Positions 2,932 through 64,000 of a stretch of 64,000 nucleotides of DNA are shown here, one piece after another (the stretch's first letter is position 1; each line of letters starts with the position of its first letter). The stretch spans positions 1-64,000 of the forward strand of contig NIVC01000034.1 of the NCBI GenBank assembly GCA_002269645.1, in the 5' to 3' direction. The stretch comes from Macrostomum lignano (Eukaryota). Below the pieces are notes generated by a model. That model was not told where the DNA came from. It searched no databases and saw only the letters and a program-made list of their open reading frames with translations. A program made the translations under genes and the position numbers.

Positions 2932-3043
2932 GTTGTTTTAAAATTACAGATTACGTTTTAACAAAATTGATTCGAGCACTATAAGCTTTTTAAAAAGGTT
3001 AATTTTTTGTTTATGAAAAATATATAGTTTAATAAGACAAACC

Positions 3044-4373: not shown

Positions 4374-4381
4374 CACATGAA

Positions 4382-4873: not shown

Positions 4874-4874
4874 C

Positions 4875-21849: not shown

Positions 21850-22800
21850 GGTGCCCACCAACGCAGTGCCCCCCACACTGTGCCCCCCAGCACAGTGCCC
21901 CCCCCAACACAGTGCCCCCACACTGTGCCCCCCAACACAGTGCCCCCAGCACTGTGCCCCCAGCACTGTGCCCCCAGCACTGTGCCCACCAGCACTGTGC
22001 CCCCCACATTGTGCCCCCAGCACTGTGCCCCCACACAGTGCCACCCAGCACAGTGCCCCCCACACTGTGCCCCCAGCACTGTGCCCCCCAGCACTGTGCC
22101 CCCAGCACTGTGCCCACCAGCACTGTGCCCCCCACATTGTGCCCCCAGCACTGTGCCCCCACACAGTGCCACCCAGCACAGTGCCCCCCCACACTGTGCC
22201 CCCACACTGTGCCCCCCACACTGTGCCCCCAGCTTTGTGCCCCCAGCACTGTGCCTCCCAGCACCTGTGCCTTCAGCACTGTGCCCTCAGCACTGTGCCC
22301 CCCAGCACTGTGCCCCCAACACTAACCCCCAGCACTGTGCCCCAACACTGTGCCCCCCACACTGTGCCCCCCCAACACAGTGCCCCCCACACTGTGCCCC
22401 CCAGCACTGTGCCCCCAGCACTGTGCCCCCCAACACTAACCCCCAGCACAGTGCTCCTAACACAGTGCCCCCACACAGTGCCCCCAGCACTGTGCCCCCC
22501 AGCACGGTGCCCCCAACACAGTGCCCCCACCACACTGTGCCCCCCAGCACTGTGCCCCCAGCTCTGTGCCCCCCAACACAGTGCCCCCCCACACTGTGCC
22601 CCCCAGCACTGTGCCCCCAGCACTGTGCTCCCAGCACTGTGCCCCCCAACACTAACCCCTAGCACTGTGCCCCAACACTGGTCCCCCCCAGCACTGTGCC
22701 CCCCAACACTAACCCCAGCACCCAACACTAACACCCAGCACTGTGCCCCAACACAGTGCCCCCCAGCACTGTGCCCCCCAACACTCTGCCCCCCCCCTGC
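21850..22800. repeat. ~15-bp C-rich minisatellite (cactgtgccccccag)n
   Basis: Direct reading. Source of the spurious CAP/TVPP ORFs. Confidence 0.93.
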
Positions 22801-25215: not shown

Positions 25216-25406
25216 ATGCTCCAGCCGCCCATCTTCATCGGGCCGAATTCGCGAGTGGCGTTTGGGGTCGAAGAGGGGAGACATAATAACACGCAAAATA
25301 TCCCCCATCGATTTGCTTCAGAAACGTCACGATCAGGATGGCTATAAACGACTGAAATTTTTTAGTCTTCATACCCTGCATCGTTATAGACCTCAGCCTC
25401 TCATCC

Positions 25407-28400
25407 ATGCAGCTGTACCAGCTTCATCAGCAGCAGCCGAATTCGTTGCTGCCAAATTTGGCATTCGGATTCACCCAAGAGCAGGTGGCGTGCGTTTGCG
25501 AAGTTCTGCTTCAAGGCGGCGACGTCGAACGACTCGCCAGATTTCTATGGTCGCTGCCCAATGCGAGCTGCTGAAACGCAACGAAAGCGTCGTGAAAGCC
25601 AGCGCCACAGTGGCTTTTCATCGCGGCAACTTCAAAGAGCTCTACAGGCTGGTTGAGAGTCACAATTTTGCACCGCAGAATCACGCTCGAATGCAGGTGA
25701 AGAGCCATTTTTCGCTTAAAATGCCATTTTTATTAGGATACATATGCAAAAATTTATCGTTAAGGAAACTTTTAATTATGATTTGGCGCCATTTATGATG
25801 ATCTGGCGTCATCTTAGATTATTTAGCGCCAGCTTAGATGATTTGGCACCATCTTAGATGATTTGGCACCATCTTAGATGATTTGGCACCATCTTAGATT
25901 ATCTGGCGCCATCTCAGGTGATTCGGCGCCATCTTAGATTTTTTCGCGCCATGTTCGATGATTTGGCGCCATTTATGATGATTTCGTGCCACTTAACATG
26001 ATTTGGCGCTATTTATGATTATTTGGCGCCGCTTAAGATAATTTGGCACCTTTTTAGATGTCTTAGCGCCACTTAACATGATTCGGCGCCGTTTATAATC
26101 ACCATAATCTTGGTAAGCACTTATGCCCTCCCTCTTCGCAGGACCTGTGGCTGCGCGCTCGCTACACGGAGGCCGAGCGCCTACGCGGCCGTCCCCTCGG
26201 CGCCGTTGGCAAGTACCGGGTGCGCAAGAAGTTCCCGCTGCCGCGCACCATCTGGGACGGCGAGGAGACATCCTACTGTTTCAAGGAGCGTTCGAGAAAC
26301 GCCCTGAGAGACTGGTACTCCAGGAACCCCTACCCGGCCCCCAGGGAGAAGCGGGACTTGGCCGAGGCAACCGGCCTGACCACCACACAGGTGTCGAACT
26401 GGTTCAAGAATCGCAGGCAGCGAGACCGAGCAGCCGCCGCGGCCGCCGCCGCCGGGATTGGGCCGCCGGGGTCGCATAGCGGAGCTCGACCGATTCTGCG
26501 CGGCGTTGACGACACGGCTGACGATTTGTGCCAGGAGGAGGAGGCCTGTGAGGATGACACGAGCGATGCTGGAGCTGCTATGTGAGTGCAAGAGTGCAGA
26601 GAGGCTCTGTTGATGCTATAGAGGACAGAGCTATTTGAGGGGGTTTGAGGGTATTTTATATGACCTGTGGGTATTATTTTAGATCTGAGGGTATTCTTTT
26701 AAAACTGAGAGTTTTCTTTTGGAGCTGAGGGTGTTCGTTTGAAACTGAGGGTATTCTTTTAGATCTGAGGCTATTCCTTTGTATGTGAGGGTATTCTCTT
26801 TTATCTGAGGGTTTCTTTTGGATCTGAGGGTATTCTTTTGTATCTGAGGGTGTTCTTTTGGAACTGAAGCTATTCTTTTGGATCTGAGGTTATTCTTTTG
26901 GACCTGAGGGTATTATTTTGAAGCTGAGGGTATTCTTTTGGATCTGAGGGTATTCGTTTGAAACTGAGGGTATTCTTTTAGATCTGAGGCTATTCCTTTG
27001 TATGTGAGGGTATTCTCTTTTATCTGAGGGTTTCTTTTGGATCTGAGGGTATTCTTTTGTATCTGAGGGTGTTCTTTTGGAACTGAAGCTATTCTTTTGG
27101 ATCTGAGGTTATTCTTTTGGACCTGAGGGTATTATTTTGAAGCTGAGGGTATTCTTTTGGATCTGAGGGTATTCGTTTGAAACTGAGGGTATTCTTTTAG
27201 ATCTGAGGCTATTCCTTTGTATGTGAGGTTATTCTTTTGTATCTGAGGGTATTCTTTAAGATCTGAAGGTATTCCTTAAGATCTGAGGGTATTCTTTTGG
27301 ATCTCAGGGTATTCTTTTGGATCGGAGGGTATTCCTTAAGATCTGAGGGTATTATTTTAGATCTGAGGGTATTCTTCTGGACCTGAGGGTATTAGTTTGA
27401 AGCTGAGGGTATTCTTTTACTTTCTCTTATTCTTGGGAAATTCTCAAAATCTTAGGGGTGGTATATTTTTAGTGAGGCACTTTTGCGACTCAGGAGAATG
27501 CTAGAGTCCCTAATTTAATTGATTGATTTAACCGAAATTGTTTCATTTTTTTGTCAGAAAAAACATATCTCTGACAATTGATACTCTCAACCGAGAATAT
27601 CATATATTATTCTCCATGGGCATGGCACAGGGTGAGGGCACATACGAGAGTGTACATGGGCTGACCGATTAGAATGTCGGGACTGCTGTACACAACGTGT
27701 GAGCGTGCAGTGTATTAATGTGTGCCTGTGTACAGCATTGGCGCGCTTGTATGTACGAGGAGTCAGGAGTCAGCGGAATGAGGCAGAATTGCTGTCAACG
27801 CTGGTTGTTGTGCCAGGGTGTCACGGATGGGTCTAAAACTTATAGAGAGCTGCTTGGGGAAGAGTTTTTGACTTCCAGGGGCTCCCGGCTCATTCATGCA
27901 GAGTCCGAAATCGAGGCCAAGCAATCTGTGGGAACAAATGACGAATGCATCAAAAGGTAGCAGCAGACATATAGCTCGATATATGAAGCATGTTTTTGTT
28001 CTCACACATGTGGAAATATCCTATATTCCAACACCATCCATTACTATAACACCTTTCTTCCGGCTCGCATATACGAGTATATGTGCGCTATGGCAGTTGG
28101 CACCATCATCCATTGTTTGTTTGAATGCAACTTGACTTCCGGGCGTACAAAGAGAGAGAGAGAGAGAAAAATATTAATAACTGCACCGATTCTCGGACAC
28201 AAATGACACTTATACTTTGACAGTCATGACAGATCGACTGGGCACTAAGCTATAGTTAAATTTATTTGCGTTTTGGAACTTGGCTTGAATTATACTTGAC
28301 CTCGGAAGGAAGCATGGTTTCGTGAGGTTTCCTCTTAGGATCCCAGTTCAAGGAGCTTAGATCCAATGAAGACCCCAGTTCAAGGAGCTTAGATCCAATG

Positions 28401-32768: not shown

Positions 32769-33931
32769 ATCTTACTTATGGAGTACAACAATTGATAATA
32801 AGAGTTCAAAGCTATACTCGCAAATAGGCTTCACTCAGCTGTAAAAATGAATTTATTCAATCTTTTGTTGCTTATCCGTGTGGAAATTTTCAATCGCGTG
32901 GCCCTTGTTTTAGATTTGATGTGATTTTTTAGTACATGCAGCAAACCTTTTCTGGAGCTCACATGAAGCTTAATAAATCCATTTACCATCGTCCGATTGA
33001 AATTAACACTATTTATTGAGCTGAAGTGCTTGTTGTGCCTCGTAAATCAAATACTCGTAAAACATGATTGAAGTTTCGAATCTTAGGCTTTTGAATAATA
33101 TACGTTCTACTTTCACTCGGCTACTTAAATATTTGTCAAGACAATTAAGACTGGCACATGTCGATGTCGCCGAAGACAAACATCTATACGAGTAATTTTG
33201 AAATATGTTTGAAACTTCTTAATATCTGCAATTTCAAGTTTTCGATCGCTCTGTGAAAAACTGAAACGTGACTTTTAGCCCCAAACTTCGAGGTGCGAAG
33301 TGAACGGTAAAGGCCTTTGTTCCTCAAAATATAGCTTTTGTTGTTGATTTGAAAAGCGCCTCTCAGCTTTTAGCACAAACTATAACAAAGACTTCTAGTG
33401 GGCCAAAGAAGATGCATAAAGACCACCCATGCAGGCCCAGTAACAAGAAATCCATTCATTCAAAGATTTTAACACTTCACCACCTCCTATATTTATTATC
33501 GCTATGAGAGAGAGAATTTGGAAACTTCAGTGTCCCCTCCCTGTTGAAGTCGGAATCTTTTTAGAAAAATAAATCTCTCCAAAATTGGCAGCACCGATTC
33601 TGTCTACAGGAGTTGAATGGAGAAATTTAAACAAAATCAGTCTTGTGTCATCGGCAGCAGACAAACACAAGTCTGAATTTTCAATCTGAACAACAGATAA
33701 ACAGAAGAAGCTGGTGGGCAACACTTCTTCAATCGATATTTTACAAAACGAATTCATTTTAAAGCTGATAATGAATTCAGCGATGTGAAGTATCTAAGAT
33801 GTTGTGAAAGGAAGCATCCATTTTTTTAATTTTACAAGTGAATCAACTTTAACAGGAGAGACCAATTTTACGGATTGCAGTTCAACAAGCACTCACTGCG
33901 AGCTTTGGCATCAAAGCCGATCCTTTTAAGC

Positions 33932-34532
33932 CACGGGTTGGCAAACTTTCTACCAGAAGAAAGGGAGAGAGGAGAGGGAATAGAGAAGAGAAATAGGAGA
34001 AAGGGGAGACTAATGAATGAAGGAGAAGAGAGGAAAGAAGAGACGAGAGGAGAGAGGAGGGGAGGGAGAAGAGAGAGGAAAAGGGAGAGGAAAGGAGAGA
34101 GAGGAGGGAAAGGAGAGGAAAGGAGAGAGAGGAGGGAAAGGAGAGGAAAGGAGAGAGAGGAGGGAAAGGAGAGGAAAGGAGAGAGAGGAGGGAAAGGAGA
34201 GGAAAGGAGAGAGAGGAGGGAAAGGAGAGGAAAGGAGAGAGAGGAGGGAAAGGAGAGGAAAGGAGAGAGAGGAGGGAAAGGAGAGGAAAGGAGAGAGAGG
34301 AGGGAAAGGAGAGGAAAGGAGAGAGAGGAGGGAAAGGAGAGGAAAGGAGAGAGAGGAGGGAAAGGAGAGGAAAGGAGAGAGAGGAGGGAAAGGAGAGGAA
34401 AGGAGAGAGAGGAGGGAAAGGAGAGGAAAGGAAGACACAAACCTTGAGCAGGCCCGGATTGCTATTGTGAAGCTTTAAAGGACCTGAGGTCCGGATAGAG
34501 AGGCTTCGCGGGCCGTAGTTCACCGACCCCTG
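33932..34532. mobile_element. hAT-like non-autonomous element with GA-rich tandem core, copy 1
   Basis: Ends CACGGGTTGGCAA...TTCACCGACCCCTG. Shares ccttgagc..ggattgctattgtgaag..agaggcttcgcggg with 53591-54284. Confidence 0.55.
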
Positions 34533-35659
34533 ATTTTTAAGTCTTGGCTTAACCCCAACTTTTACTCTCTTCTTGCAGATGCCACTGATGCCTACTAACA
34601 AGTCCCTTGGCATCCAAGCAACCCACCCCCATGAGCCACGGCATTTCAGCGATTCTCCCAAATGAGCCTTGAAAGTTGTCTGAAAATGGTCGCGATTAGC
34701 TCCCAAGCTCCGATTCTAAGAAACAGAGGAAGTCCATAATAACTGCAGCCGAACACGCGACTAGACATTGTTGCAGTCCAGTTGGTCACGTGACATAAAA
34801 AGGAACCAAAACTAAGCCCCCTTCGCACGCGCGCCTATTGTTTTAAATCAACGTTTATAATAAAAAAACGCGTTACTGCTCTTGCATTTGACAAAGAAAA
34901 CCCTGAACTGGAGAAGGCATTGATCCATCTATCCATCCTTTGCATTGAGTCACTTCAAGCGTTCTCAAACTCAAAGCAGACTGATAATGATCATGCTTGG
35001 AGGACACGTGTCATAATCCTATCACATGGTGCGCTTTTTTGTATTTGAATTGACAGAATTTAGAACAGCTGTGCAGCAAACCTTAGCAATCTGATTCTTT
35101 TCTGAGATGCCTGCCTGTAATAGTTTCCCTAAACTTCTATAGAAACATTTTTTCAGACTTTTCTTCTTTAAAATTGATTACTCGCGCAATGATAGAGACT
35201 TTTTGAGTTGTTTTTGGGGAATGGCACGACAAAATTATTTTATTCTTCAAACAGCAAACCACATAAATGAATGGGCCGGTTTTTGTACAACCAACTACAT
35301 TATGCTATAATTGAGAAATGTGAAATTGAAATCAGCGCTTCTATACTCACTAAGAAATAACATCAAAAGTTCAAATCTGTTAGGAAAAACAACAATAGGA
35401 CTCATCAACACTGTGACCAGTTAGCAAATTATAAAGTATACATTATACTCCACAGCACAAAATGTAGTTAAATTGTAATAATTGATATCAACTATTGATA
35501 AAACCTAAACAGTAAGGACAAGATAAATAGGCTTGAATAAACTTGGATAAATTTGGCTGAAAAAATACAAATTGCACGACAAGCTGTGACTGCACGTTTC
35601 AATGCTTCATTAATTATTACTTCTTGAAGATACGAGTGTCACCCCTAGGTCATGAGGCT

Positions 35660-41260: not shown

Positions 41261-41874
41261 TCAAGCCTGCTCATCCGGCCCAGAGCCAACCTGAGCATGC
41301 CCGATCGAAGCAGCAGCCTCGCTAATAGAATCTGCGGCAGCTTTAGCCGCATCTAATTGACGTTTCTCAGCCTCTTGACGCTTATAATCTGTGTTAAACA
41401 TTAGCGTGTAGAGAATGGCCAACACTGCAGCCATACCAGCGAACACTAGACAGGCCAGGCTGTAGTCCATAGGAGGCGGTACAGCACATGCTGTCAGCGC
41501 TGTCGTGGCTGTAGGAGTCGCCAACACCTGGCCAGCGACCATGAGCACCACGGAGGCCAACTGACCAGCTAGCACAAGAAGGCCAGTGCTCACCGCCTCT
41601 CCAACAGGATGAGTAGCTTCTACGCCCAGTTCCAATGCTATCGGATAGAATGCGAAACCGAATGCGCCAAATGCCGCAATCGAGGAGACTACGGCAGCGT
41701 GAGAATTTGGCCGGCCAATCAAGGCGGCGAATGCGGCTGAGGTGGCCGCGGCCAAGCTGAAGGATACCTGAGAGTGGGGTTGGGGTGGGCCAAGGAATTA
41801 CAGCCCAGAAATCCCACTAATTGCAGAATGTCGAAAATTTCACCAATCACGGCTATCAACCATCTATCTGTCTG

Positions 41875-41920
<46 letters not shown>

Positions 41921-42092
41921 ATCTATCTATCTATCTGTCTATATATTTATGTATCTACCTATCTATCTATCTATCTGTCTATCTATCTATCTATCTAATC
42001 TAATCTATCTATCTATCTATCTATCTACCTATCTATCTATCTATCTGTCTATATATTTATCTATCTACCTATCTATTTATCTATCTATCTAA

Positions 42093-42135
<43 letters not shown>

Positions 42136-42172
42136 CCTATCTATCTGTCTATATATTTATCTATCTACCTAC

Positions 42173-42214
<42 letters not shown>

Positions 42215-42215
42215 G

Positions 42216-42250
<35 letters not shown>

Positions 42251-43149
42251 GTCTATCTATTTATCTATCTATCTATCTATCTACCAAAAACAAACCAAAT
42301 AGGTAACAAAAAGTCTACCTATATTTTCCGCTAAAAATCTACTCGGGATAAGCAAGAGTACTATTTCTGCAGCTGCAAATATTAAATGTACGACACTACT
42401 ACGACTACGACTACGATTACGACTACTACTACTCTACTACTACTACTTCTACTACTACTACAACAACAACTACTACTACTACTGCAACTACTAGTGCTAC
42501 TACTACTGACAATCTAGCTTCAACTGATCGGCAGTGCCCAGTCGCCTGTGACCAGGGGCTGTGCAGGCGGCGATCTGTGACCAGACGCCGCCAACTGCGT
42601 CTCTCGTGGCCTGTCTGGCTACCCAATTAATTACTGTATATGAATTCAATAGTTACATCTAATTATTTACACTTATTTATGCAAAGTTCTCAGTGCTCTG
42701 TATTAATTTAATATTTGTTTTTTTCTACGGGCGTAATTAACTTATTTGTTGAACTTTTCAAGATGCTTAGTCATACACTTCTACGCTTTAAATCTGGTTT
42801 TCTATAGCACCTAACATATTTATTTTTGTGCAAGGCTTTAGCTGCAAGACTTTAACCAATCAGCGTGCTTCAACTCACGTTTTTAACTAATTATACGTAC
42901 ACATCTTTACTCAACACTGCTCAGTGCACCCCCAAACGTTGCATGTATATATTGAAATTATGTTAAAATAACTTCACAGCCAATATATTTGTTTTTAAAC
43001 CCGAATAAATAAACCCTGACGAAGGCCCAGTCCGGGCCGAAATATCGGTTTCTGAATATTCGACAACTAACGTTCTTCAATATTTCCGTGTGTGTGGTTT
43101 GCAGTTTGAAGCTGCCTTTTGCATATCTATCTATCTATCTGTCTATCTG

Positions 43150-43184
<35 letters not shown>

Positions 43185-43194
43185 GTCTATCTAT

Positions 43195-43230
<36 letters not shown>

Positions 43231-43286
43231 TTACCTATCTATCTACCTATCTATCTGTCTATATATTTATCTATCTACCTACCTAC

Positions 43287-43348
<62 letters not shown>

Positions 43349-43349
43349 G

Positions 43350-43400
<51 letters not shown>

Positions 43401-43401
43401 G

Positions 43402-43432
<31 letters not shown>

Positions 43433-43457
43433 GTCTATCTATCTATCTATCTATCTG

Positions 43458-43529
<72 letters not shown>

Positions 43530-45067
43530 CAGTCGTCTCACCTTAGACAGTGTTATAAATCTCTTCGTATAGTCTGCAACAGCTCCGGCCACCCCGGCCC
43601 CAACCAGTCCAGCACCAATCAGCACAGCGCCGCAGATGCCAGCAAACTGATCTGAGTAACCATACGGACACAGAATCTGCTCCAGCAGGGCTGACAATGC
43701 CGTGAACAGGCCCATTCCAGCGCCTACGGCTAGCAACAGTAATCCGAAAGCTCGATTAGTTAAACAGGCACGAATACTCAACCAGAATGTGAGATGCTGA
43801 GCAGCAGCAGATTGATGCAGCTCAGATTCAGCAACACCTGGCGCTTGTCTAGTAAAAATTGACGTAACAACAGAGAACAGCAAAGCAGCTGCCGCAGCCA
43901 TAAAGTACACTAAACTGACTAACGGCAGGTCAGTTTTCGATTTCACTAGCAGAGGCGATAGGATATTAGTGAGCAGAATTCCCAATGGATTGGACATGCT
44001 GCCCAGTGTGTTAGCAGTAGCCCGCTGGCTGACAGGAAATTCTGACGCAACAGCAGTTGGAGAAAACATGAAGAATGGCTGAGCAATGGCAGCTGTAATT
44101 TGGCCAGCCAATGCCAGAGAGAATGATGGTTGAGCTAGTATGGCGCTAGCGTACCGCATGGCGCCACCAGATGCACTGAAAATGGCGCCAATTAGAAGAC
44201 CGGTGCGAACGCCAAGTCTGTGTTGTGGGGAAGATTATGGAGAGTTGGCTTCTGTTAATAGCAATTCCAGTGTCAGTCATAAAAATAATTTTCAATAAAA
44301 TGTACACAGGCATCAAATGGGAATTATTTGGATAGTTATGTGCTCAAGGGGAATTATTTGGATAGTCATGTGCTCAAGGGGAATCATTTGGATAGTCATG
44401 CGCTCAAGGGGAATTATTTGGATAGTCATGTGCTCAAGGGGAATTATTTGGATAGTCATGTGCTCAAGGGGAACTATTTGGATAGTCATGTGCTCAAGGG
44501 GAATTATTTGGATAGTCATGTGCTCAAGGGGAATTATTTGGATAGTCATGTGCTCAAGGGGAATCATTTGGATAGTCATGTGCTCAAGGGGAATCATTTG
44601 GATAGTCATGTGCTCAAGGGGAATTATTTGGATAGTCATGTGCTCAAAGGGAATCATTTGGATAGTCATGTGCTCAAGGGGAATTATCGAGATGGTAGTG
44701 TTCTTGAGGGGAATTCTTATGAAAGCAAATTGCTCCTCAAGGGTATTAGTCAAATAGACAATAAATAAATGATAAATTTTGCAAGTATTTACCTATCCAG
44801 ACAATATGCAGTTGGCAAGCCAAAAACCAGTGAAGCAAGAGGATAGACAAGAGCCAGCCAGTTAACACCATCAGCAGTTACATTATAGAACAACTGAGTA
44901 TAGTCAGCAATGGCTGAATAAGTTATCCATAGGGCAGCATTGGATACATTCAACAAACCCAATGTTAACACTAAGAACCAGCGATTAAAAAGTGTTCTAA
45001 TTGTAGCAGTATCGTTTGAGTCATTGCTGCTATGAACTAGATATACTGTTCCACTGTTGCTCTCCAT
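41261..45067 (-). CDS. SLC49A3: MFS transporter, SLC49 (FLVCR) family, SLC49A3/MFSD7-like; complement(join(41261..41767,43542..44217,44793..45067)), 485 aa
   Basis: [21 protein letters not shown]|LGVR, FSPT...[26 protein letters not shown]. All junctions are GT-AG and in phase. Confidence 0.85.
41865..42510. repeat. (TCTA)n microsatellite followed by (ACT)n
   Basis: Direct reading. Confidence 0.95.
43124..43528. repeat. (TCTA)n microsatellite
   Basis: Direct reading. Confidence 0.97.
44320..44690. repeat. 30-bp intronic minisatellite (tgctcaaggggaattatttggatagtcatg)
   Basis: Direct reading. Confidence 0.93.
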
Positions 45068-50175: not shown

Positions 50176-56453
<6,278 letters not shown>

Positions 56454-57317: not shown

Positions 57318-57387
57318 ATGTCTGCTTTAACTCCTCGAATGTCGGGAGCAATCGTCTGCCTCCTAGTGCTTATCGTCGGTGTACCAG
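57318..57387 (+). CDS. Leader (signal peptide) exon of the MAM-like variable-exon gene
   Basis: MSALTPRMSGAIVCLLVLIVGVP+G, hydrophobic core, strong donor G|GTAAGT, phase 1. Confidence 0.8.
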
Positions 57388-57463
57388 GTAAGTGCAACGC
57401 TTTCGTTGCTTATTAAAATTACCCAATCAAAATATGAAAGACTTTAAATAAAGTATTCAATAT

Positions 57464-57488
57464 TTGGCAAGGCTCGTTGCTCCATTCT
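57464..57488 (+). promoter_or_regulatory. Putative intronic docking site TTGGCAAGGCTCGTTGCTCCATTCT
   Basis: Reverse complement (AGAATGGAGCAACGAGCCTTGCCAA) matches the motif found upstream of each variable exon. Confidence 0.85.
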
Positions 57489-57813
57489 CTATATAGTTGA
57501 AAAATTGGCTAATATGATAAAATAATTTTTTTCGAATGAGTTGCCTGAGTAGTTTAAAAATATTGTCTTTAAATTTTTTTGAATGGGGCTAAGATGCGCA
57601 TTTTTTCACGAATTTGTGATTCATTGTAACAAAACAAAATATGATAATTAATTATCTAATTAATTTGCTTGAATTTATATTTAAAATCAGTAGCTTTAAG
57701 TTATTATAATGCGATTAGGAGTTAACGAGATTCTTTCATATCATACGCTCGTACATGATCAATGTGTTTGCAAAAATTGTTGCTCTAGCGTGCATCGATT
57801 GCGCCTACTCTAG

Positions 57814-58198
57814 GGGTGCAAAATTCACTGGCTGTTTTTGACGATTCGGTGTCAGTTTCGTGCGACTTTGAACAGCAACATTCTGCTGCTAGTAGAAGTT
57901 CGTCAAAAACTGATTCTCAGTTCTGCAACTGGGTAGATTTAGCCTGGAAACCGGGCAGTGCTTGGCAGATTCGCTATCTGACAGAGTTCAACACTCAGGC
58001 TGTCTGTCTGCACGGCGGCTCAGCCAGACTGCAGAGTCCCTGGTGGATTGATTCTGCTAGTAGCAATTTCAGGCGTCAGAGTGCTCAGTGCTTGTCGTTT
58101 GCTTATCACGTAACTCCTAACAATCAATTAGGAGATTCATCGAAGTCTTCTATCGAAACTGACTTACCTCAACTGGCTTTATTGAAGAATACTCACGG
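57814..58198 (+). CDS. Variable exon V1, MAM-like N-terminal part
   Basis: 385 nt, phase 1 to 2. CDFEQ..CNW..W..CL..ARLQSPW..CLSFAY..LLKNTHG. Weak selector GGAGTTAACGAG at 57718-57729. Confidence 0.82.
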
Positions 58199-58490
58199 GT
58201 AAGTTTAGGTTTTTATTAACTCAAGGGAAAAACGTCTCTTGCCAACAGCACAAACTCGTGCATCTTTCTAACGATAGAAATCACTTAGTCAATTGACCTT
58301 TTTTCTCGGAAAGCATCCCTGACGACATGCATTGTTAAAACATAACATTACCACCTCTAACAGGACTTGTGGCTTAGTTTTTTTAGTGATATCGCAATTA
58401 GTCCTTGTATAAGTTTATGGAGCAGCGAGTCTGCTCCGAGATTTCCTACATAAAGTCTACTGCTTATAATTATTAATATGCTTTATGCAG

Positions 58491-58881
58491 TGTTGGAGGC
58501 AGTTGCAGTCAGTACTGGAGCTAGTGTAATGGAAGAAGAGTCCCTATCAACGGATCGCTGGTCAAGCGACGGTTATAATCGGGAATTAGAATGGCGTCGA
58601 TTTGCTATTCATAGCAGTCTGAACGCTGGTTCTCCTGCCTCGTCAGTTAACGTTAGAACCGGATCTGCAATTACGAATAGTTGGTGCACAGCTGGATTGA
58701 TTCCTTCACCGTCGGTTGCTGTGTCTGGTCGGTTGTTAAGCGACTGGGTGCGCAGCGGCCGCGATAGCAGCAATGGACTCTGCTTGTCGTTTAGTTATCG
58801 TATCGACTATGGACCAGAACGACGGAAAAGCGATGTTGACGATACCGCCGCAGTGTTGGCTCTTCTAAGGCGATCGTCGGG
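58491..58881 (+). CDS. Variable exon V2
   Basis: 391 nt, phase 1 to 2, ends LLRRSSG|GT. Selector ATGGAGCAGCGAGTCT at 58417-58432. Confidence 0.8.
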
Positions 58882-59021
58882 GTTAGAAAAATGCTTTGAT
58901 TTATGTTCTGTTTTTTGCATTTGCTTAGCAACGAGCCTTAGCTTAATTGATTGTGTTCGTACTTAGCTTGGCTGGTAACTTGAGAAAATTATTTATAATT
59001 ACCAACGCTTCGATTGCGCAG

Positions 59022-59385
59022 CGAGTTCACTTTCGTCGTCTGGTAGTGCTAACCGAATGGTTATTAAACAGCTCACCTGCAGTGGTAGCGGTTTCGGCAG
59101 TAGTTCTCAATCTTGTAATTGGTTCAACGATATCGGCTATAATACTGAGGCGCATTGGAAGTTGGCTAGCATTGCCGATTCGGATGGTAGCGCTGCCACC
59201 GCTGCCACTTATCGAACCAGTTATTGCGCAGTTGTCACTGGCGGTGCTACTAGCGCACAGCTTGTATCGGCTAGATTTGTTAGCCTATTCATTGCTAGCA
59301 GTTCGGTCAGCGAAGGCTGCATGCAGTTCTCTTACCAGCTAGTTGATCGGCAGAGTCAATTGCAATTGTTGAAGCGCAATTCCGG
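59022..59385 (+). CDS. Variable exon V3
   Basis: 364 nt, phase 1 to 2, ends LLKRNSG|GT. Selector AGCAACGAGCCTT at 58927-58939. Confidence 0.82.
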
Positions 59386-59535
59386 GTATGAGAATTGAAA
59401 AACACTATTATAGCTATATAACTAGTCATTATTAATGTCCTGTTGCAACGAGCCTTGTAGAAAATTAGTCAGAATTGGGAGTTTAGCAGTTACACGATTT
59501 TACAGTGATTGATTGCTGCTTTCACTGTATTTCAG

Positions 59536-59878
59536 CCTTTGGTTTATCAAACAGCAGATTTAGTGGCTTTGACATTAAAGCTTTGCAATGTCAAAGCAAT
59601 GGCGCTGATACATGTCTATGGAGCGATGACAATGGCTACAATACAAAAGCGCACTGGAAGCTGGCTGCTGTGCAGTCTTCGCCAGACTCTCCGTTACACC
59701 GATCAGCTTTCTGCATGGTTCCAATAAATCCTAGCGTCACGGCTGCGACCTCAATTTCGGCTAGATTTGTCAGCTTATTTCTCTCCGAACCGATTGAGTC
59801 CGCCTGCTTGCAGTTTGTGTATCAGTTGGTACCTGCAGCCTCAGCTCCATCGCTCCAGTTGCTTAAACGTCACTCTGG
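59536..59878 (+). CDS. Variable exon V4
   Basis: 343 nt, phase 1 to 2, ends LLKRHSG|GT. Selector GCAACGAGCCTTG at 59445-59457. Confidence 0.82.
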
Positions 59879-59995
59879 GTAAATTGCACAGGATTCCCCT
59901 TTAATTTTTTTTCGAATAGGATGGAGCAACGAAACCTTGATTGACCAAAACTCTGTTGATAATTTAGTAAAATAATGGCTTGAAAAATAATCTAG

Positions 59996-60305
59996 TTACC
60001 GGTCTATCTGATGAAGCTGTAAAACAATTGCACTGCGATAGTGGATCCCGCTGCTATTGGCTAGATGACAGTTACAATACTGACGCCCACTGGCAGTTGG
60101 CTACTGTTACTGAGAGTTCTCGCTTTCAAACGCACTATTGCCTAATTAGAGATGTGTCGGCGCTTAAACGTGTAACTAAGGCTCGTTTTGTTAGCCGCTT
60201 TGTTACTGACAGCAAAGTGGGCTGTTTGCACTTTCGCTATCTGATCAGTCAGCAGGATGATGAGTTAAGTGGTGCGGATCTGCACCTGCTTCGACGGAAT
60301 CGAGG
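59996..60305 (+). CDS. Variable exon V5
   Basis: 310 nt, phase 1 to 2, ends LLRRNRG|GT. Selector ATGGAGCAACGAAACCTTG at 59921-59939. Confidence 0.8.
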
Positions 60306-60474
60306 GTATGGCGCTGGTTTCTTTTGTACTCTTAGTTATGATGCTGCATGATTACTTACTGTTATTTTAAACTTGTTCAAACAAACACGAGCAACGAGCC
60401 TTGACTAGCTTGCAGTTTCTTTATAAACTGATAATTATATAGTCCAGGTTATACATTAGATGGCTCTCTTGCAG

Positions 60475-60760
60475 CAACTAAAATAGATCTGCAGTGCACA
60501 GCTCGAGGTCACTGTGCCTGGCTCAACGACGTTTTCAATCGTCTGCACTGGACCTTGGCAGACGTTGGTGCAGTTGCTGGTGGTAACACTGGCCTGTGTC
60601 TTGTACCTCAGTCGGTGTCGTCATCTTCTGTTGGTAGCGATGCAGGCGGTCAATTTGTCAGTCCGACGGTATTTTCTAAAGTTAGCGGTCAGATGTGTCT
60701 TCAGTTTGTCTACTGGACTGCTGGTCGAGCTAAATTGAATCTATTAAAGCGCAGTTTAGG
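60475..60760 (+). CDS. Variable exon V6
   Basis: 286 nt (alternative same-phase acceptor at 60460), ends LLKRSLG|GT. Selector GAGCAACGAGCCTTG at 60389-60403. Confidence 0.8.
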
Positions 60761-60902
60761 GTATGATTTATCATTTTAGCGATGCTTGAACCGTCAAGAT
60801 ATATTTAGTTAATTTGATTTGATGCAACGAGCCTTGTCTAAAGTTTCTGTTTATAATAGATCTTTAACGACTACATTGACTCTTTCGGAAAATCAATTTT
60901 AG

Positions 60903-61257
60903 CCGGTACATTAGCTGCAGTGTCAGTACCCGAGTTAACGTGCATAAGTACGTCAGCTAGCCCTTGCACTTGGCGCGACGATCAAGATAATATTGACGCT
61001 CATTGGCGCGCCTCCTTGTATCCGTCGGCTGCATTTCAGTCACCGCGATGTCTAGTGCCGGAGCCAAGCGTTTTGTCGGGTTCTAGCTACTCTAGCTCAC
61101 GACCCTTAACCGTAGCTCGGTTTGTTAGCCAATGGCTTACTGGCAGACGTGGTGATATGTGTCTTCAGTTTGCCTATCGAATTGATCAACCGATGGCTAC
61201 TCGTAAAGAGACAACTGTTGCTGGTGCTGGATTAAGCTTGCTGAAACGGAGCAGAGG
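60903..61257 (+). CDS. Variable exon V7
   Basis: 355 nt, phase 1 to 2, ends LLKRSRG|GT. Selector GCAACGAGCCTTG at 60824-60836. Confidence 0.82.
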
Positions 61258-61415
61258 GTATGAGTTGGCTATAAAAATAATGCAAAAAACGTGAAATAAC
61301 TGGAGTAACGAGCTTTTGTCATAAAATTTCAGTTAGTGTCCTTGGAATTTTGGCTTAAATATTGTAAGAGATGCATGTCTAATTATTTAACTGCTAGACT
61401 GTTTTTCCACCTCAG

Positions 61416-61734
61416 CGACGCTTGAACAGTTGTCCTGCCACGCTGGCGGTCACTGCAGTTGGCGTGATGATTTCGACAATAAAGGCGCCCACTGGGTGTC
61501 CGCCCTGGATGCTGCAAGCGACGCGTCCTCGTTAGGCAGCGGCAGATCGCACCTGTGCTTGGTTCAGAGCGGACCTCAGCCGCACAGTTTAGTGACTGGT
61601 CGCTTTGAGAGTCACTGGATTGCTGCCACTAAATCTGATAATGAGCAGCAGTTGTCGCCATCTGTTTGCCTCACGTTCAGCTACTTGACGGCGCCGCGGG
61701 AGGTGTCGCTGAGTTTGCTCAAGCGAAACTGGGG
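61416..61734 (+). CDS. Variable exon V8
   Basis: 319 nt, phase 1 to 2, ends LLKRNWG|GT. Selector TGGAGTAACGAGCTTT at 61301-61316. Confidence 0.82.
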
Positions 61735-61847
61735 GTAAAAGAAATTGAGTTTAAATTTTGTTTACTTTGTGAGCAATGAGCTTTGCCATTAGTTATTGCT
61801 TGTATTTTAAAATTGTTTTTGTGACGCTTGCCTGAACATGAATTCAG

Positions 61848-62205
61848 CTTCTAAAATGGCTGACGAACGTCTTGCTTGTTCTTCGAGCACTTCGGCAATC
61901 TGTGCTTGGCGAAACGATCTTGACAACAAAGACGGCGCTTGGAAAATGACGCTGGAGCCGCCTGGCTTTAGCCGCGCAGCACTCTCGTCTTACTGTTTGG
62001 TTCCTATCAGGCGTCCAATGTCATCTGGCAGGAGTTCTGTCAGTCTAGTTGCTGAATTTCATAGCGCTTGGGTGTCTGGAGGGACGACAGGATCAGACCC
62101 TAGTGCTGGTCAATTGTGTCTTCAGTTTGCATTTAGAGTGAAGGATTCGTTCCATTCTTCTAGTGCCAGCGCGGCAAAACTGGTTCTGCTAAAACGCGTC
62201 TCTGG
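61848..62205 (+). CDS. Variable exon V9
   Basis: 358 nt, phase 1 to 2, ends LLKRVSG|GT. Selector GAGCAATGAGCTTTGCCA at 61771-61788. Confidence 0.82.
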
Positions 62206-62331
62206 GTAGGAGTTTTTGCATCATGTTTATTCCCGCTTCTTTAGGCGAGCCTTGCCAAGTTTATTGAATTTGATAGCACACCTGTGGTAGCTGAAATTGT
62301 AACCGTTTTTTATGTCTTTTTTTCAAATAAG

Positions 62332-62674
62332 TTACCCACTGCGTTTCGGTTGACTGCTCCTCAAAATTGCCAAATGTTTGCACATGGAGCGACGGTCAAT
62401 TCAATCGAGCTGCCAACTGGAAGGTCGCAATTGACTCCAATAGTCGCTGTGCTTCCTATTGCCTCGTTCCAAATAAGATTAGGTCTCAAGCGATGACGTC
62501 ATCACGTAGCTCTTCGGCACAGGCTTACACTGGAAGCTTTCTTAGTGGCTGGATTGTCGCTGAAGAGTCAAGACAGAATCCAATGTGTCTGCAATTCAAT
62601 TACAAGTTTGTTCTAGCAGAGCCAGTAATATCCAAGCCTGGATTGCAACTGGCTTTGTTAAAGCGTACATTTGG
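62332..62674 (+). CDS. Variable exon V10
   Basis: 343 nt, phase 1 to 2, ends LLKRTFG|GT. Selector GGCGAGCCTTGCCAA at 62244-62258. Confidence 0.82.
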
Positions 62675-62796
62675 GTATGTTTTTGGATTAAATTGGAGCA
62701 ACGAGTCTTATTAATCAATTTTTAGCTTGATAAAAAATGCATCAAGTTTAATTAGTATATGTAAAGCATCTAGAACTCGTAAATGCCCTCTTATAG

Positions 62797-63115
62797 CCGT
62801 CTCAATTGATTGCTCATCGACCTCGCCTACTTTTTGCACTTGGAGCGATTCACCTTTTAATCGGGCAGCCAATTGGAAGGCCGCAATCGATCCCAGCGTT
62901 CGTAGCGGTGGTAGAAGCGCGTCCTATTGCTTGATTCCAAATAGACCAGTAGCTACAGAAGACACTACTCACAGCGGTAGCTTTCTTAGTAATTGGATAA
63001 CCAAAACGAAAGAATCCGGTTCGCCAGAGCAGCAGATGTGTGTTCAGTTTGCGTACAAGTTTATTGGTTCGCCAATGACTAGAATGCATCTGGCTCTGTT
63101 AAAGCGTTCATATGG
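62797..63115 (+). CDS. Variable exon V11
   Basis: 319 nt, phase 1 to 2, ends LLKRSYG|GT. Selector TGGAGCAACGAGTCTT at 62694-62709. Confidence 0.82.
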
Positions 63116-63245
63116 GTAAGGTCTAAAACCTGTCAGGTAAAAGTGAGCTTTTTACAGTAGAGTTTCTTTGAGCAACGAGTCCTTGTGTATGCTGCTTTTT
63201 CATTTTTGCTATAGGTACGTTTGTACTTGTTTTATTGCGTTATAG

Positions 63246-63576
63246 TGACATGTCTTGCCTCTTCGATTAATTGCTCGTCCAATTCGCCTATGCTCTGCTC
63301 GTGGAGCGATTATCCATTCAATCGAGCCGCTAATTGGAAGGCAACAATCGATTCTAATAGTCGTTCGTCCTCTTATTGTTTAATTCCTAATGCGGCTTTG
63401 GTGATGCCTATTAATGCAGCGTCTGAACAAGGATTTGCGGCCAGCTTTATTAGCGGTTGGATCGCTGGAAAAAACCAACGCTCGATGTGCTTGCAGTTTG
63501 CGTATAAATTTTTAGTGTCATCTCAATTGCCTGAACGTAGGCAGTCTTCTCTGGCATTATTGAAACGTTCATTTGG
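63246..63576 (+). CDS. Variable exon V12
   Basis: 331 nt, phase 1 to 2, ends LLKRSFG|GT. Selector GAGCAACGAGTCCTTG at 63170-63185. Confidence 0.82.
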
Positions 63577-63872
63577 GTATGCTTTTATTTCAACTGATGC
63601 GATAAAAAAATGAGTACAAAAAGGTTCTGCTGCCCCCATAGATTAAAAAATTTCGTCAGGAGCGATGCATTGAAAAGCCTTAAAATGCGTCGTATGTTTG
63701 GTCATGAAGCTTTACTCCGGGCCTCTGTGAGACTGTATATTCGGGTGCAACAAAAAACTACTCCGTCTCTTAGAAGTAAAAGTTTTGAGATGGAGCAATG
63801 AGCCTTTATAATGTTAATAGAGTGGAAGTATGATGACGCATGATGCATTTTCTCTGAAAATAATTACTATAG

Positions 63873-64000
63873 CTACTTCGTCGACACATTTAATTGACTG
63901 CTCATCGAGCTCTCCTATGCTTTGCGCATGGAGCGATGATCCTTACAATCGAGCAGCCAATTGGAAGGTGGCCATCGACCCCAGAACTGGCCACTCGTCC
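63873..64000 (+). CDS. Variable exon V13 (runs off window)
   Basis: Phase-1 acceptor, ATSSTHLIDCSSSSPMLCAWSDDPYNRAANWKVAIDP. Selector ATGGAGCAATGAGCCTT at 63790-63806. Confidence 0.8.

What the first reader, a model, noticed from the sequence alone, without database searches (positions are those of the whole stretch)
57318..64000. Dscam-like hypervariable gene: at least 13 mutually exclusive MAM-like exons chosen by a docking-site/selector RNA switch
Seen: one signal-peptide exon, then 13 tandem paralogous exons (V1-V13, array continues off-window). The leader intron carries a single site, TTGGCAAGGCTCGTTGCTCCATT (57464-57486), whose reverse complement recurs once upstream of each variable exon (V1's copy is weak): 57718, 58417, 58927, 59445, 59921, 60389, 60824, 61301, 61771, 62244, 62694, 63170, 63790. 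Established: in the Drosophila Dscam1 exon 6 cluster, one docking site pairs competitively with a selector upstream of each variant so that only one is included. Inference: this locus uses the same competing-RNA-structure logic to generate many secreted or cell-surface MAM-like isoforms (self/non-self, immune, adhesion or reproductive recognition). The gene is not an Ig/Dscam gene and the animal is apparently not an arthropod, so this would be convergent evolution. I know of no prior description but could not search.
Basis: partly seen in the sequence, partly recalled or inferred. Interest (0 to 1): 0.97.

Follow-up and report, generated by a model that had tools for sequence, protein, structure and literature searches.

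The report
Flatworm MAM receptor with Dscam-style exon switch
A flatworm (Macrostomum lignano) membrane-protein gene builds its single MAM domain from one of 14 alternative first-half exons and one of about 15-20 alternative middle exons, and each exon array has a unique intronic "docking" sequence complementary to a "selector" before every alternative exon, the RNA switch so far described, as far as I could find, for insect genes such as Dscam1.

Summary
The window is Macrostomum lignano contig NIVC01000034.1, and the gene is BOX15_Mlig029915g2.

- **Exon array.** A 70-nt signal-peptide exon is followed by 14 paralogous V exons, 13 of them in the window. All have phase-1 acceptors, phase-2 donors and lengths of 1 mod 3. 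Each encodes only the N-terminal ~60% of a MAM domain.
- **Docking and selectors.** The docking site (57464-57486) is unique in the window. It pairs at -27 to -34 kcal/mol with one site in each of the 13 inter-V introns, against -13 for shuffled docking. All strong selectors cover the same docking core. The V1 selector is weak.
- **Second array.** Downstream, off the window, lies a second array of about 20 W exons with its own, unrelated docking site and selectors, and no cross-pairing with the first.
- **Strand signature.** Selector substitutions are biased to G·U-compatible transitions (26 against 3), as expected for selection on the sense RNA.
- **Transcript evidence.** The RNA-seq-based gene model contains exactly one V and one W exon.

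Homologous V arrays exist in trematodes and cestodes, but I found no docking site in Schistosoma haematobium. No description turned up in the literature searched. Actual exon choice remains untested.

The parts
57318..57387 (+). Constant leader exon (start codon plus signal peptide, 70 nt, ends in phase 1, donor CCAG|GTAAGT)
   Evidence: It is identical to residues 1-23 of PAA93052.1 / P0023.
57394..57409 (+). Perfect 6-bp hairpin GCAACG-CTTT-CGTTGC just after the leader donor. Its arms repeat the selector core and the docking core. Role unknown.
   Evidence: MFE fold of the start of the leader intron.
57464..57486 (+). Docking site 1 (TTGGCAAGGCTCGTTGCTCCATT), 77 nt downstream of the leader donor
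   Evidence: Unique in the window. Pairs with all inter-V introns at a mean of -30.5 kcal/mol, against -13.1 with cluster-2 introns. Nt 57466-57480 are covered by 10-12 of the 12 strong in-window selectors.
57717..57739 (+). Selector for V1 (degenerate: AGGAGTTAACGAGATTCTTTCAT)
   Evidence: -17.5 kcal/mol only. Aligns with the other selectors.
57814..58198 (+). Variable exon V1 (385 nt, 1 mod 3). It is the V used in the annotated transcript.
58416..58440 (+). Selector for V2
   Evidence: -32.6 kcal/mol.
58491..58881 (+). Variable exon V2 (391 nt). Divergent: it lacks the first two conserved Cys.
58926..58944 (+). Selector for V3
   Evidence: -27.0 kcal/mol.
59022..59385 (+). Variable exon V3 (364 nt)
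   Evidence: Pfam MAM positions 4-93, E 5e-5.
59440..59459 (+). Selector for V4
   Evidence: -28.4 kcal/mol.
59536..59878 (+). Variable exon V4 (343 nt; an alternative in-phase acceptor lies at 59506)
59919..59949 (+). Selector for V5 (with a bulge)
   Evidence: -29.5 kcal/mol.
59996..60305 (+). Variable exon V5 (310 nt)
60388..60409 (+). Selector for V6
   Evidence: -32.1 kcal/mol.
60475..60760 (+). Variable exon V6 (286 nt; an alternative in-phase acceptor lies at 60448)
60819..60839 (+). Selector for V7
   Evidence: -30.5 kcal/mol.
60903..61257 (+). Variable exon V7 (355 nt)
61300..61322 (+). Selector for V8
   Evidence: -31.3 kcal/mol. The two substitutions in the second genomic copy are U/C exchanges opposite G.
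61416..61734 (+). Variable exon V8 (319 nt)
61767..61789 (+). Selector for V9
   Evidence: -34.2 kcal/mol.
61848..62205 (+). Variable exon V9 (358 nt)
62243..62259 (+). Selector for V10 (pairs with the 5' half of the docking site)
   Evidence: -27.6 kcal/mol.
62332..62674 (+). Variable exon V10 (343 nt)
62693..62715 (+). Selector for V11
   Evidence: -29.2 kcal/mol.
62797..63115 (+). Variable exon V11 (319 nt)
63169..63187 (+). Selector for V12
   Evidence: -27.5 kcal/mol.
63246..63576 (+). Variable exon V12 (331 nt)
63788..63818 (+). Selector for V13
   Evidence: -32.2 kcal/mol.
63873..64000 (+). Variable exon V13, cut by the window end. In the full record it ends at 64221 (349 nt, 1 mod 3). 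Beyond the window, in record coordinates (which equal window coordinates): V14 selector ~64290, V14 64374-64719, docking site 2 at 65025-65059, W1-W20 65399-72470, constant exon ~72559, last exon (TM helix plus tail) to 73323.

Best explanation
This is the 5' part of a Macrostomum lignano gene for a single-pass type I membrane protein. Its only ectodomain is one MAM domain, assembled from three pieces.

- **Piece 1.** One of 14 alternative V exons encodes MAM profile positions ~1-93.
- **Piece 2.** One of about 15-20 alternative W exons (~50-68 aa) encodes the stretch from 'SC...' to '...DFK'.
- **Piece 3.** Constant exons encode the end of the MAM domain, the TM helix and a cytoplasmic tail of roughly 150 aa.

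This gives about 210-280 possible isoforms.

Exon choice in each cluster is most likely governed by competing RNA pairings of the Dscam1 exon-6 type. A single docking site lies in the intron upstream of the array. It can pair with only one of the selectors that precede each alternative acceptor. Pairing loops out the upstream variants and brings the chosen acceptor next to the upstream donor. Transcripts with two variants of one cluster would be out of frame, because every V and W exon is 1 mod 3.

Shown here: the exons, their phases, the half-domain coding, the unique docking sites, the per-intron selectors, their overlapping footprints and cluster specificity, the strand-asymmetric substitution pattern, and one RNA-seq-derived transcript with one V and one W.

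Inferred: that the pairing forms in vivo and determines the choice, that all variants are used, and that the isoforms serve cell-surface recognition.
For: - **Identity of the locus.** The window is identical to NIVC01000034.1. P0023 / PAA93052.1 consists of leader, V1, W3 and constant exons with a TM helix. It passes the Pfam MAM gathering score, 32.3 against 26.4 bits, at profile positions 108-158. V exons alone match profile positions 1-93.
- **Exon phases.** All 14 V exons have a phase-1 acceptor, a GG|GT phase-2 donor and a length of 1 mod 3. All W exons are also 1 mod 3.
- **Docking 1.** It is unique. It pairs with the 13 inter-V introns at a mean of -30.5 kcal/mol. Controls: shuffles -13.0 ± 1.4, other windows of the leader intron at best -16.2, antisense introns -10.8 to -19.0, and the best of 573 upstream tiles -26.0.
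- **Selector position and footprint.** Selectors lie 35-93 nt upstream of the acceptors. All strong ones cover docking nt 57466-57480.
- **Intron divergence.** Apart from the selectors the introns are unalignable, and the V exons share only 22-43% amino-acid identity.
- **Independent replicate.** Docking 2 (L001 17708-17742) pairs with all 18 short inter-W introns at a mean of -32.9 kcal/mol, against -18.0 ± 1.2 for shuffles. Docking 1 against those same introns gives only -13.1.
- **Strand signature.** Transitions within selectors are 26 G·U-compatible against 3 pair-breaking (p 1.5e-5 at 50:50, and about 5e-4 by my own hand estimate assuming 60% opportunity for compatible changes).
- **Second genomic copy.** In the copy with 97.8% identity, docking and selectors differ at 0.93% against 2.99% for the rest of the introns. 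Both substitutions are U/C exchanges opposite G.
- **Transcript basis.** The genome annotation is RNA-seq-based (PMC5730564).
Against: - There is no direct evidence that the V and W exons other than V1 and W3 are spliced in. Only one transcript model is in the databases.
- Older ab initio models stitch several V fragments together. These look like mis-predictions, but they show that the databases do not settle the matter.
- V1, the only V with transcript support, has the weakest selector.
- The homologous Schistosoma haematobium array (14 V exons) has no detectable docking site in its 11-kb first intron and no shared intron motif. The RNA switch is therefore not demonstrably conserved with the exon array, and cross-species covariation could not be obtained.
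- Synonymous against nonsynonymous differences between the two Macrostomum copies (5 against 14) are too few to show selection on individual V exons.
- Three W units have truncated reading frames.
Confidence: 0.75

Rival explanations
1. The repeated intronic element is a binding site for a splicing factor (an intronic enhancer or silencer needed by every V or W exon). The inverted copy upstream is incidental or binds the same factor, and RNA-RNA pairing plays no part in exon choice.
For: A conserved intronic motif at a fixed distance from each acceptor is also what a protein-binding element would look like. No docking was found in Schistosoma although the exon array is conserved there.
Against: - Two unrelated motifs in two clusters each have exactly one reverse-complement copy, placed upstream of their own array and specific to it.
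- Individual selectors match different, overlapping parts of the docking site rather than one fixed core-plus-flank.
- Substitutions are strand-asymmetric and G·U-compatible, 26 against 3. A protein site would not produce that pattern.
Confidence: 0.08
2. The pairings form but do something other than pick one exon. They might generally shorten the long effective intron, promote skipping of the whole array, or trigger editing or small-RNA production. Exclusivity would then be enforced only by frame incompatibility with nonsense-mediated decay, or by a repressor.
For: In the Dscam model, pairing alone does not explain the silencing of downstream variants (PMC6071210). V1, the exon seen in the transcript model, barely pairs.
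Against: One selector sits directly upstream of each alternative acceptor, and the footprints on the docking site are mutually exclusive. That is the specific geometry expected for selection, and it is found twice.
Confidence: 0.08
3. Only one V and one W are functional. The remaining units are decaying duplicates (pseudo-exons), and the motifs persist merely because the duplications carried them along.
For: There is a single transcript model. Three W units have truncated frames. Nonsynonymous differences exceed synonymous ones between the two copies.
Against: - The V exons have diverged to 22-43% amino-acid identity and their introns are unalignable. Yet all 14 keep open frames, the Cys/Trp framework, the acceptor, the GG|GT donor, the phase and a selector.
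- Arrays with the same exon design persist in trematodes and cestodes, with 14 open V exons in S. haematobium.
- Different annotated schistosome models join the leader to different V exons.
Confidence: 0.05
4. The inverted and direct repeats are DNA-level recombination signals for somatic rearrangement of the array, a V(D)J-like or invertase-like process.
For: One site in one orientation and many sites in the other is formally the layout of some recombination systems.
Against: - Recombination between inverted sites would invert the intervening exons rather than join them.
- The elements lie inside introns bounded by normal splice sites.
- The substitution pattern is strand-specific and G·U-tolerant, which points to RNA.
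- No recombinase is evident at the locus.
Confidence: 0.02

Closest known systems
Drosophila / pancrustacean Dscam1 exon 6 cluster (Graveley docking site-selector model)
   Same: - A tandem array of paralogous alternative exons, each encoding part of one extracellular domain.
- One docking site in the intron downstream of the preceding exon.
- One complementary selector upstream of every variant, with overlapping footprints, so only one duplex can form at a time (described in PMC6071210; found here).
- More than one variable cluster per gene, giving combinatorial isoform numbers.
   Different: - The animal is a flatworm, not an arthropod.
- The domain is MAM, not Ig. P0023 has no Ig or FN3 match.
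- The two clusters divide one single domain.
- The arrays are smaller: 14 and about 20 exons, against 48 in exon 6.
- Introns are very short (about 90-300 nt) and the docking sites are only 23-35 nt long.
- The docking and selector sequences are unrelated to those of Dscam, so the system is presumably of independent origin.
- No experimental evidence exists yet.
Insect 14-3-3zeta, Mhc, MRP1, srp and Dscam exon 4/9 clusters (competing RNA structures with a downstream or bidirectional docking site)
   Same: Mutually exclusive exons are controlled by competition of intronic selectors for one docking element (PMC6071210).
   Different: In those genes the docking site lies downstream of the cluster, or on both sides. 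Here both clusters have an upstream docking site, and no downstream partner was found.
Clustered protocadherins, UGT1A and chelicerate sDscam (variable first exons chosen by alternative promoters)
   Same: A tandem array of variable exons joined to shared constant exons gives many cell-surface isoforms.
   Different: In those genes each variable exon has its own promoter, start codon and signal peptide. Here one leader exon precedes the array, and every V exon has an acceptor site and no leader of its own.
MAM-domain adhesion receptors (RPTPmu/kappa, meprins, neuropilins, MDGA)
   Same: The protein contains a MAM domain (Pfam PF00629). MAM domains of RPTPmu/kappa mediate homophilic binding. 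That statement rests on my own knowledge and on the title of the reference (Zondag et al. 1995) as listed in PMC9258826.
   Different: Here the MAM domain is the only ectodomain. It is followed by a TM helix and a low-complexity tail with no catalytic domain. It has no close solved relative by sequence. Its sequence is diversified by alternative exons.

Membership tests
Docking site-selector (competing RNA structure) mutually exclusive exon cluster, Dscam1 exon-6 type | Tandem array of homologous alternative exons with identical splice phase | tested here: met
   14 V exons have a phase-1 acceptor and a phase-2 donor. About 20 W exons have a phase-2 acceptor and a phase-0 donor. All lengths are 1 mod 3.
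Docking site-selector (competing RNA structure) mutually exclusive exon cluster, Dscam1 exon-6 type | A single docking site in the intron upstream of the array | tested here: met
   Docking 1 is unique in the 64 kb. Docking 2 is the only outlier in the V14-W1 intron: median -27.2 kcal/mol against a background of -9.6.
Docking site-selector (competing RNA structure) mutually exclusive exon cluster, Dscam1 exon-6 type | One selector upstream of each variant, complementary to the docking site, with overlapping footprints | tested here: met
   13 of 14 V selectors are strong (-27 to -34 kcal/mol) and one is weak. All 18 short inter-W introns give -26 to -41. There is a shared docking core, and the two systems do not cross-pair.
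Docking site-selector (competing RNA structure) mutually exclusive exon cluster, Dscam1 exon-6 type | Evolutionary conservation or covariation of docking and selectors | tested here: inconclusive
   Selectors are conserved among paralogous introns that are otherwise unalignable. They are less diverged than the introns between two genomic copies, 0.93% against 2.99%. Transitions are G·U-biased, 26 against 3. No docking or selector was found in S. haematobium and none was evident in a Paragonimus contig. No closer Macrostomum species was available.
Docking site-selector (competing RNA structure) mutually exclusive exon cluster, Dscam1 exon-6 type | Exactly one variant per cluster in mature mRNA | tested here: inconclusive
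   The only RNA-seq-derived model has one V (V1) and one W (W3). No other isoform is in the protein collection. Junction reads could not be examined.
Docking site-selector (competing RNA structure) mutually exclusive exon cluster, Dscam1 exon-6 type | Disruptive and compensatory mutations change and restore exon choice | not testable with these tools
   This needs minigenes or edited worms.
MAM domain (Pfam PF00629) | Match to the family profile above the curated threshold | tested here: met
   P0023 scores 32.3 bits against a cut-off of 26.4, at profile positions 108-158. V exons alone match positions 1-93 below threshold, E 5e-5 to 0.27.
MAM domain (Pfam PF00629) | Beta-sandwich fold | tested here: inconclusive
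   The single-sequence AlphaFold2 model is unusable (mean pLDDT 42.3). No solved relative was found by sequence.
Dscam / immunoglobulin superfamily | Ig and FN3 domains | tested here: not met
   In P0023, Pfam finds only MAM plus a below-threshold DUF6479 match (22.8 against 25.4 bits).
Alternative-promoter variable-exon clusters (protocadherin / UGT1A / sDscam type) | Each variable exon carries its own start codon and signal peptide and lacks an acceptor site | tested here: not met
   There is one leader exon with the signal peptide. Every V starts at an in-phase AG acceptor and has no leader of its own.

The most novel reading that the evidence does not exclude
Flatworms independently evolved a Dscam-like hypervariable surface receptor. 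It would be a single MAM domain diversified combinatorially (about 14 x 15-20 isoforms) by two RNA-pairing-controlled exon clusters, with stochastic, cell-specific isoform choice providing isoform-specific homophilic recognition. Candidate roles are neuronal self-avoidance, tissue or allorecognition, gamete recognition, or immunity. The exon-array design is inherited across Platyhelminthes, including schistosomes, flukes and tapeworms, where the choice mechanism may have changed.
Probability: 0.3. Interest if true: 0.95.

Novelty: new variant of a known kind. Interest (0 to 1): 0.86.

Why it matters
**For splicing.** In the account I read (PMC6071210), large multi-exon docking-selector arrays are described for insect genes. 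Eight full-text searches found no flatworm or MAM example. An independent origin in a different phylum and gene family would show that this RNA-structure logic is a general, evolvable way to get one-of-many exon choice. The second cluster provides a built-in replicate.

**As an experimental system.** This would be a small, tractable model. Introns are about 100-300 nt and docking sites 23-35 nt. The animal is transparent and regenerating, and transgenesis has been established for it (PMC5730564).

**For cell-surface diversity.** It would add a third molecular scaffold, MAM, to the short list of hypervariable metazoan surface receptors (Dscam, clustered protocadherins).

**For parasitology.** Homologous variable-exon arrays exist in human-parasitic schistosomes, lung flukes and tapeworms. 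There they are currently annotated as fragmented or chimeric 'MAM domain-containing' or hypothetical proteins.

Tried and rejected
- **Word-indexed protein search with the V alignment.** It found nothing. The exhaustive HMM search was needed.
- **Exact look-up of a window ORF.** This was an attempt to identify the organism, and it failed.
- **Rfam and tRNA scans of the window.** Both were empty.
- **Other V-like exons.** None lie elsewhere in the window or on the minus strand, and the region has no minus-strand ORF of 90 aa or more.
- **Shared 11-mer in cluster-2 introns.** None was found. The docking-2 system only appeared in an energy scan, because individual selectors match different parts of the docking site.
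- **Selectors masking the upstream W donor.** I tested whether cluster-2 selectors act by masking the adjacent upstream W donor, since docking 2 contains a relic '...EDFK|GT' exon end. Local donor-intron pairing (mean -9.6) is no better than at V donors (mean -11.5). Rejected.
- **Downstream or bidirectional docking.** None was found for cluster 1 in the V14-W1 intron or upstream of the leader. None was found for cluster 2 in the long intron or after the last W.
- **Schistosoma haematobium.** I found no shared intron 10-mer and no seed complementarity between the first intron and the inter-V introns. No intronic family appeared among the 20 largest direct-repeat families shown. The duplex-energy scan gave no outlier: best median -18.3 against a background of -11.9. 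An earlier, heavier version of that scan timed out.
- **Paragonimus contig.** The repeat scan was uninformative.
- **Structure.** The single-sequence AlphaFold2 model of P0023 was too poor to use, so I made no fold search. The PDB sequence search found no relative.
- **Selection on V exons.** Synonymous against nonsynonymous counts between the two genomic copies were too few to interpret.
- **Literature.** Eight full-text searches combining MAM, flatworm genera, mutually exclusive splicing and docking/selector found no description.

Full report

With the bare 23-nt docking site the energies are -27.0 to -34.2 kcal/mol (mean -30.6). The controls are far weaker: -13.0 ± 1.4 for shuffled docking sites, at best -16.2 (mean) for other windows of the same intron, -10.8 to -19.0 for the antisense introns, and -26.0 for the best of 573 tiles of the upstream 57 kb.

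**2. Exon anatomy.** Twelve complete V exons and the start of a thirteenth lie in the window. At the homologous position each has an AG acceptor that leaves two bases to complete the leader's split codon. Each ends ...L-L-K/R-x-x-G with the donor GG|GT(A/T). Their lengths are 385, 391, 364, 343, 310, 286, 355, 319, 358, 343, 319 and 331 nt, every one 1 mod 3. Two V exons joined to each other would therefore shift the frame.

The V peptides share only 22-43% identity. They keep an invariant Cys/Trp framework. They match Pfam MAM (PF00629) only over profile positions ~1-93 of 158. A single V thus encodes an incomplete domain. All coding signal is on the + strand. Apart from the selector the introns cannot be aligned.

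**3. What the locus is.** An exhaustive profile search with the V alignment returned P0023. This is GenBank PAA93052.1, BOX15_Mlig029915g2, of the flatworm Macrostomum lignano. Its sequence runs as follows:
- leader, then V1;
- SCSQLKAV...TDFK;
- LIFEGTIPANNPNARICVDNITAYHRPC...;
- a TM helix (MVFIFIGALAFALIIAVSIFAI);
- a Pro/Ala-rich cytoplasmic tail of roughly 150 residues.

The whole protein passes the Pfam MAM threshold through its C-terminal part, at profile positions 108-158. Fetching the locus (L001) showed that the window is identical to NIVC01000034.1 and that window coordinates equal record coordinates. The annotation of this assembly was built from RNA-seq with StringTie, TACO, a de novo transcriptome and TBONE (PMC5730564). 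P0023 is therefore a transcript-derived model containing exactly one V. Older UniProt models (P0010, P0116, P0117) fuse the upstream aldolase-like gene with trimmed pieces of several V exons. They look like ab initio artefacts forced by the frame problem.

**4. The array is larger, and there is a second one.** In L001 the V array ends with V13 (63873-64221) and V14 (64374-64719). V14 has its own selector, GCGAGCCTTGCCAA, with a duplex energy of -30.0.

The piece 'SC...DFK' of P0023 maps to one member (W3) of a second tandem array. In the cluster-2 span there are 20 array units ending D-F-K|GT. Fifteen have the canonical acceptor ag|N-TCN-TGY (Gly-Ser-Cys) and intact frames. Two are atypical and three have truncated frames. 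All are 1 mod 3, with phase 2 in and phase 0 out. The MAM domain is thus assembled from V (one of 14), W (one of about 15-20) and constant exons, for about 210-280 combinations.

**5. A second, independent docking-selector system.** I scanned the V14-W1 intron for 24-nt windows that pair with the inter-W introns. One sharp outlier appeared at L001 ~17705-17742 (record 65025-65059), ATTTGGCAGCGGGGAAGACTTCAAGGTACCTTGCA. Its median was -27.2, against a background of -9.6. Every one of the 18 short inter-W introns contains a complementary site, at -26 to -41 kcal/mol.

The two systems are specific to their own clusters:

| Docking site | Cluster-1 introns | Cluster-2 introns |
|---|---|---|
| Docking 1 | -30.5 | -13.1 |
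| Docking 2 | -21.3 | -32.9 |

Shuffled docking 2 gives -18.0 ± 1.2 on cluster-2 introns. Docking 2 contains what looks like the 3' end and donor of a relic W exon (...GEDFK|GTAC). That fits an origin by partial duplication of the kind proposed by Ivanov and Pervouchine (PMC6071210). Neither cluster has a downstream docking partner.

**6. Evidence that the RNA, not the DNA or a protein site, is what is conserved.**
- Individual selectors match different, overlapping stretches of the docking site. All 12 strong in-window selectors cover nt 57466-57480, so only one can pair at a time.
- I compared the selectors with the perfect complement of the docking site. Transitions that keep a G·U pair on the sense RNA (C>T, A>G) number 26. 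Transitions that would break the pair (G>A, T>C) number 3. The binomial p is 1.5e-5 at 50:50. By my own hand estimate it is about 5e-4 after allowing for base composition.
- A second genomic copy is available (L004, NIVC01004926.1, 97.8% identical). There the docking and selectors differ at 3 of 324 positions (0.93%), against 2.99% for the rest of the introns. Both substitutions are U/C exchanges opposite a docking G.

**7. Mechanism proposed.** It is the Dscam1 exon-6 model (PMC6071210).
- The docking site, 77 nt into the leader intron, pairs with one selector.
- The variants in between are looped out, and the acceptor just downstream of the chosen selector is brought next to the leader donor.
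- The same happens between the chosen V donor and the W array, through docking 2.
- The 1-mod-3 lengths mean that any transcript with two V or two W exons carries a frameshift.

What silences the variants downstream of the chosen one is unknown here, as it is in part for Dscam.

The exons, phases, sites, energies and substitution pattern are shown. Pairing in vivo, its causal role and the use of all variants are inferred. V1 may be a proximity default that needs no selector. This would fit its weak selector and its presence in the only assembled transcript, but it is speculation.

**8. Relatives.** The V profile finds proteins annotated as hypothetical, unnamed or 'MAM domain-containing' in these taxa:
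- Paragonimus (three species);
- Schistosoma (several species);
- Heterobilharzia;
- Spirometra;
- Dibothriocephalus.

Those examined contain several V-like units, each ending L-L-(K/R)-x-x-G. Some are followed by W-like units.

The S. haematobium locus (L005) has 14 open V exons with the same GG|GT phase-2 donors. Its leader exon lies 11 kb upstream. Different models join the leader to different V exons. A Paragonimus contig has four V exons, one split in the frame, and three W-like hits. The exon-array design therefore seems to be old within Platyhelminthes.

The Macrostomum type of docking-selector system was not found in S. haematobium by k-mer, seed-complementarity, repeat or energy scans. 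There the choice mechanism may differ, may be too degenerate to detect, or may lie outside the 34 kb fetched.

**9. Comparison with what is known.**
- *How it works:* like the Dscam1 exon 6 cluster, with an upstream docking site. It is unlike 14-3-3zeta, Mhc or MRP1, where the docking site is downstream.
- *Membership:* the sequence-level defining features of a docking-selector cluster are met, twice. Cross-species covariation and one-variant-per-mRNA are inconclusive.
- *What it is not:* it is not a Dscam or Ig gene. It is not a protocadherin-type alternative-promoter cluster, because there is one leader and every V has an acceptor.

Eight full-text searches found no paper describing a flatworm or MAM-domain cluster of this kind. 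Subscription-only literature was not searchable.

**10. Verdict.** I rate it a new variant of a known kind of system: competing-RNA-structure mutually exclusive splicing, here in a new phylum, a new gene family and a new domain, with two clusters dividing a single domain.
- Confidence that RNA pairing governs one-of-many exon choice here: about 0.75.
- Confidence that the gene encodes many single-MAM membrane isoforms: higher.
- The recognition function remains a hypothesis.

Noticed in passing
window 742-6750 (+): A run of long intron-less ORFs. The ORF at 3213-4373 is an rve-type integrase with a C-terminal chromodomain (Pfam rve and Chromo). The neighbouring ORFs have no Pfam match. It is probably a mobile element inserted in this contig.
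   Followed up: partly
window 25262-25798 (+): An exon-like ORF with a SIX1 SD domain (Pfam PF16878, E 9e-12). It is a Six-family homeobox gene, and the first sign that the window is from an animal.
   Followed up: no
window 41261-44159 (-): Exons of an MFS transporter. The best hits are bird MFSD7 / SLC49A3 proteins at 41-43% identity.
   Followed up: partly
window ~50179-56453 (+): A Beta_elim_lyase (aldolase-like) gene lies directly upstream (L001 2862-9136). It carries the same transcriptional-unit name as the MAM gene (Mlig029915 g1 and g2). In the naming scheme of this annotation (PMC5730564) this suggests one precursor transcript cut by spliced-leader trans-splicing.
   Followed up: no
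window 57394-57409 (+): A perfect hairpin, GCAACG-CTTT-CGTTGC, starts 7 nt after the leader donor. Its two arms are the core of the selectors and the core of the docking site. It could be a competitor of the docking site or a relic of an ancestral stem-loop.
   Followed up: no
window exons V10-V13, e.g. 62383-62396, 62846-62858, 63303-63315, 63928-63940: The codons for C-x-W-S-D (CATGGAGCGAYG...) resemble the selector's 5' half. Docking 1 therefore also pairs moderately with these four exons, at -23 to -28 kcal/mol. This may be chance, an exonic auxiliary site, or a hint to the origin of the selectors.
   Followed up: no
L001 17705-17742 (record 65025-65059), beyond the window: Docking site 2 contains an in-frame '...GSGEDFK|GTAC', the conserved 3' end and donor of a W exon. 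It looks like a relic exon end recruited as a docking site.
   Followed up: partly
window 7100-7830, 9240-11450, 16775-18255, 21700-22910, 33870-34700, 43090-43655, 51850-52955, 53610-54300, 54912-55517: Many long tandem or low-complexity repeat tracts produce spurious ORFs in several frames on both strands.
   Followed up: no
L003 (NIVC01004127.1) and L004 (NIVC01004926.1): The assembly holds two further copies of the start of this locus, 99.96% and 97.8% identical. This is consistent with the known redundancy of the M. lignano DV1 assembly (PMC5730564).
   Followed up: partly
L005 (S. haematobium CM039143.1:68669047-68703080): The schistosome homologue is annotated as at least four separate small genes plus a chimeric two-V model. 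In fact it consists of 14 or more V exons behind one distant leader. The current annotation of this locus in parasitic flatworms looks wrong.
   Followed up: partly
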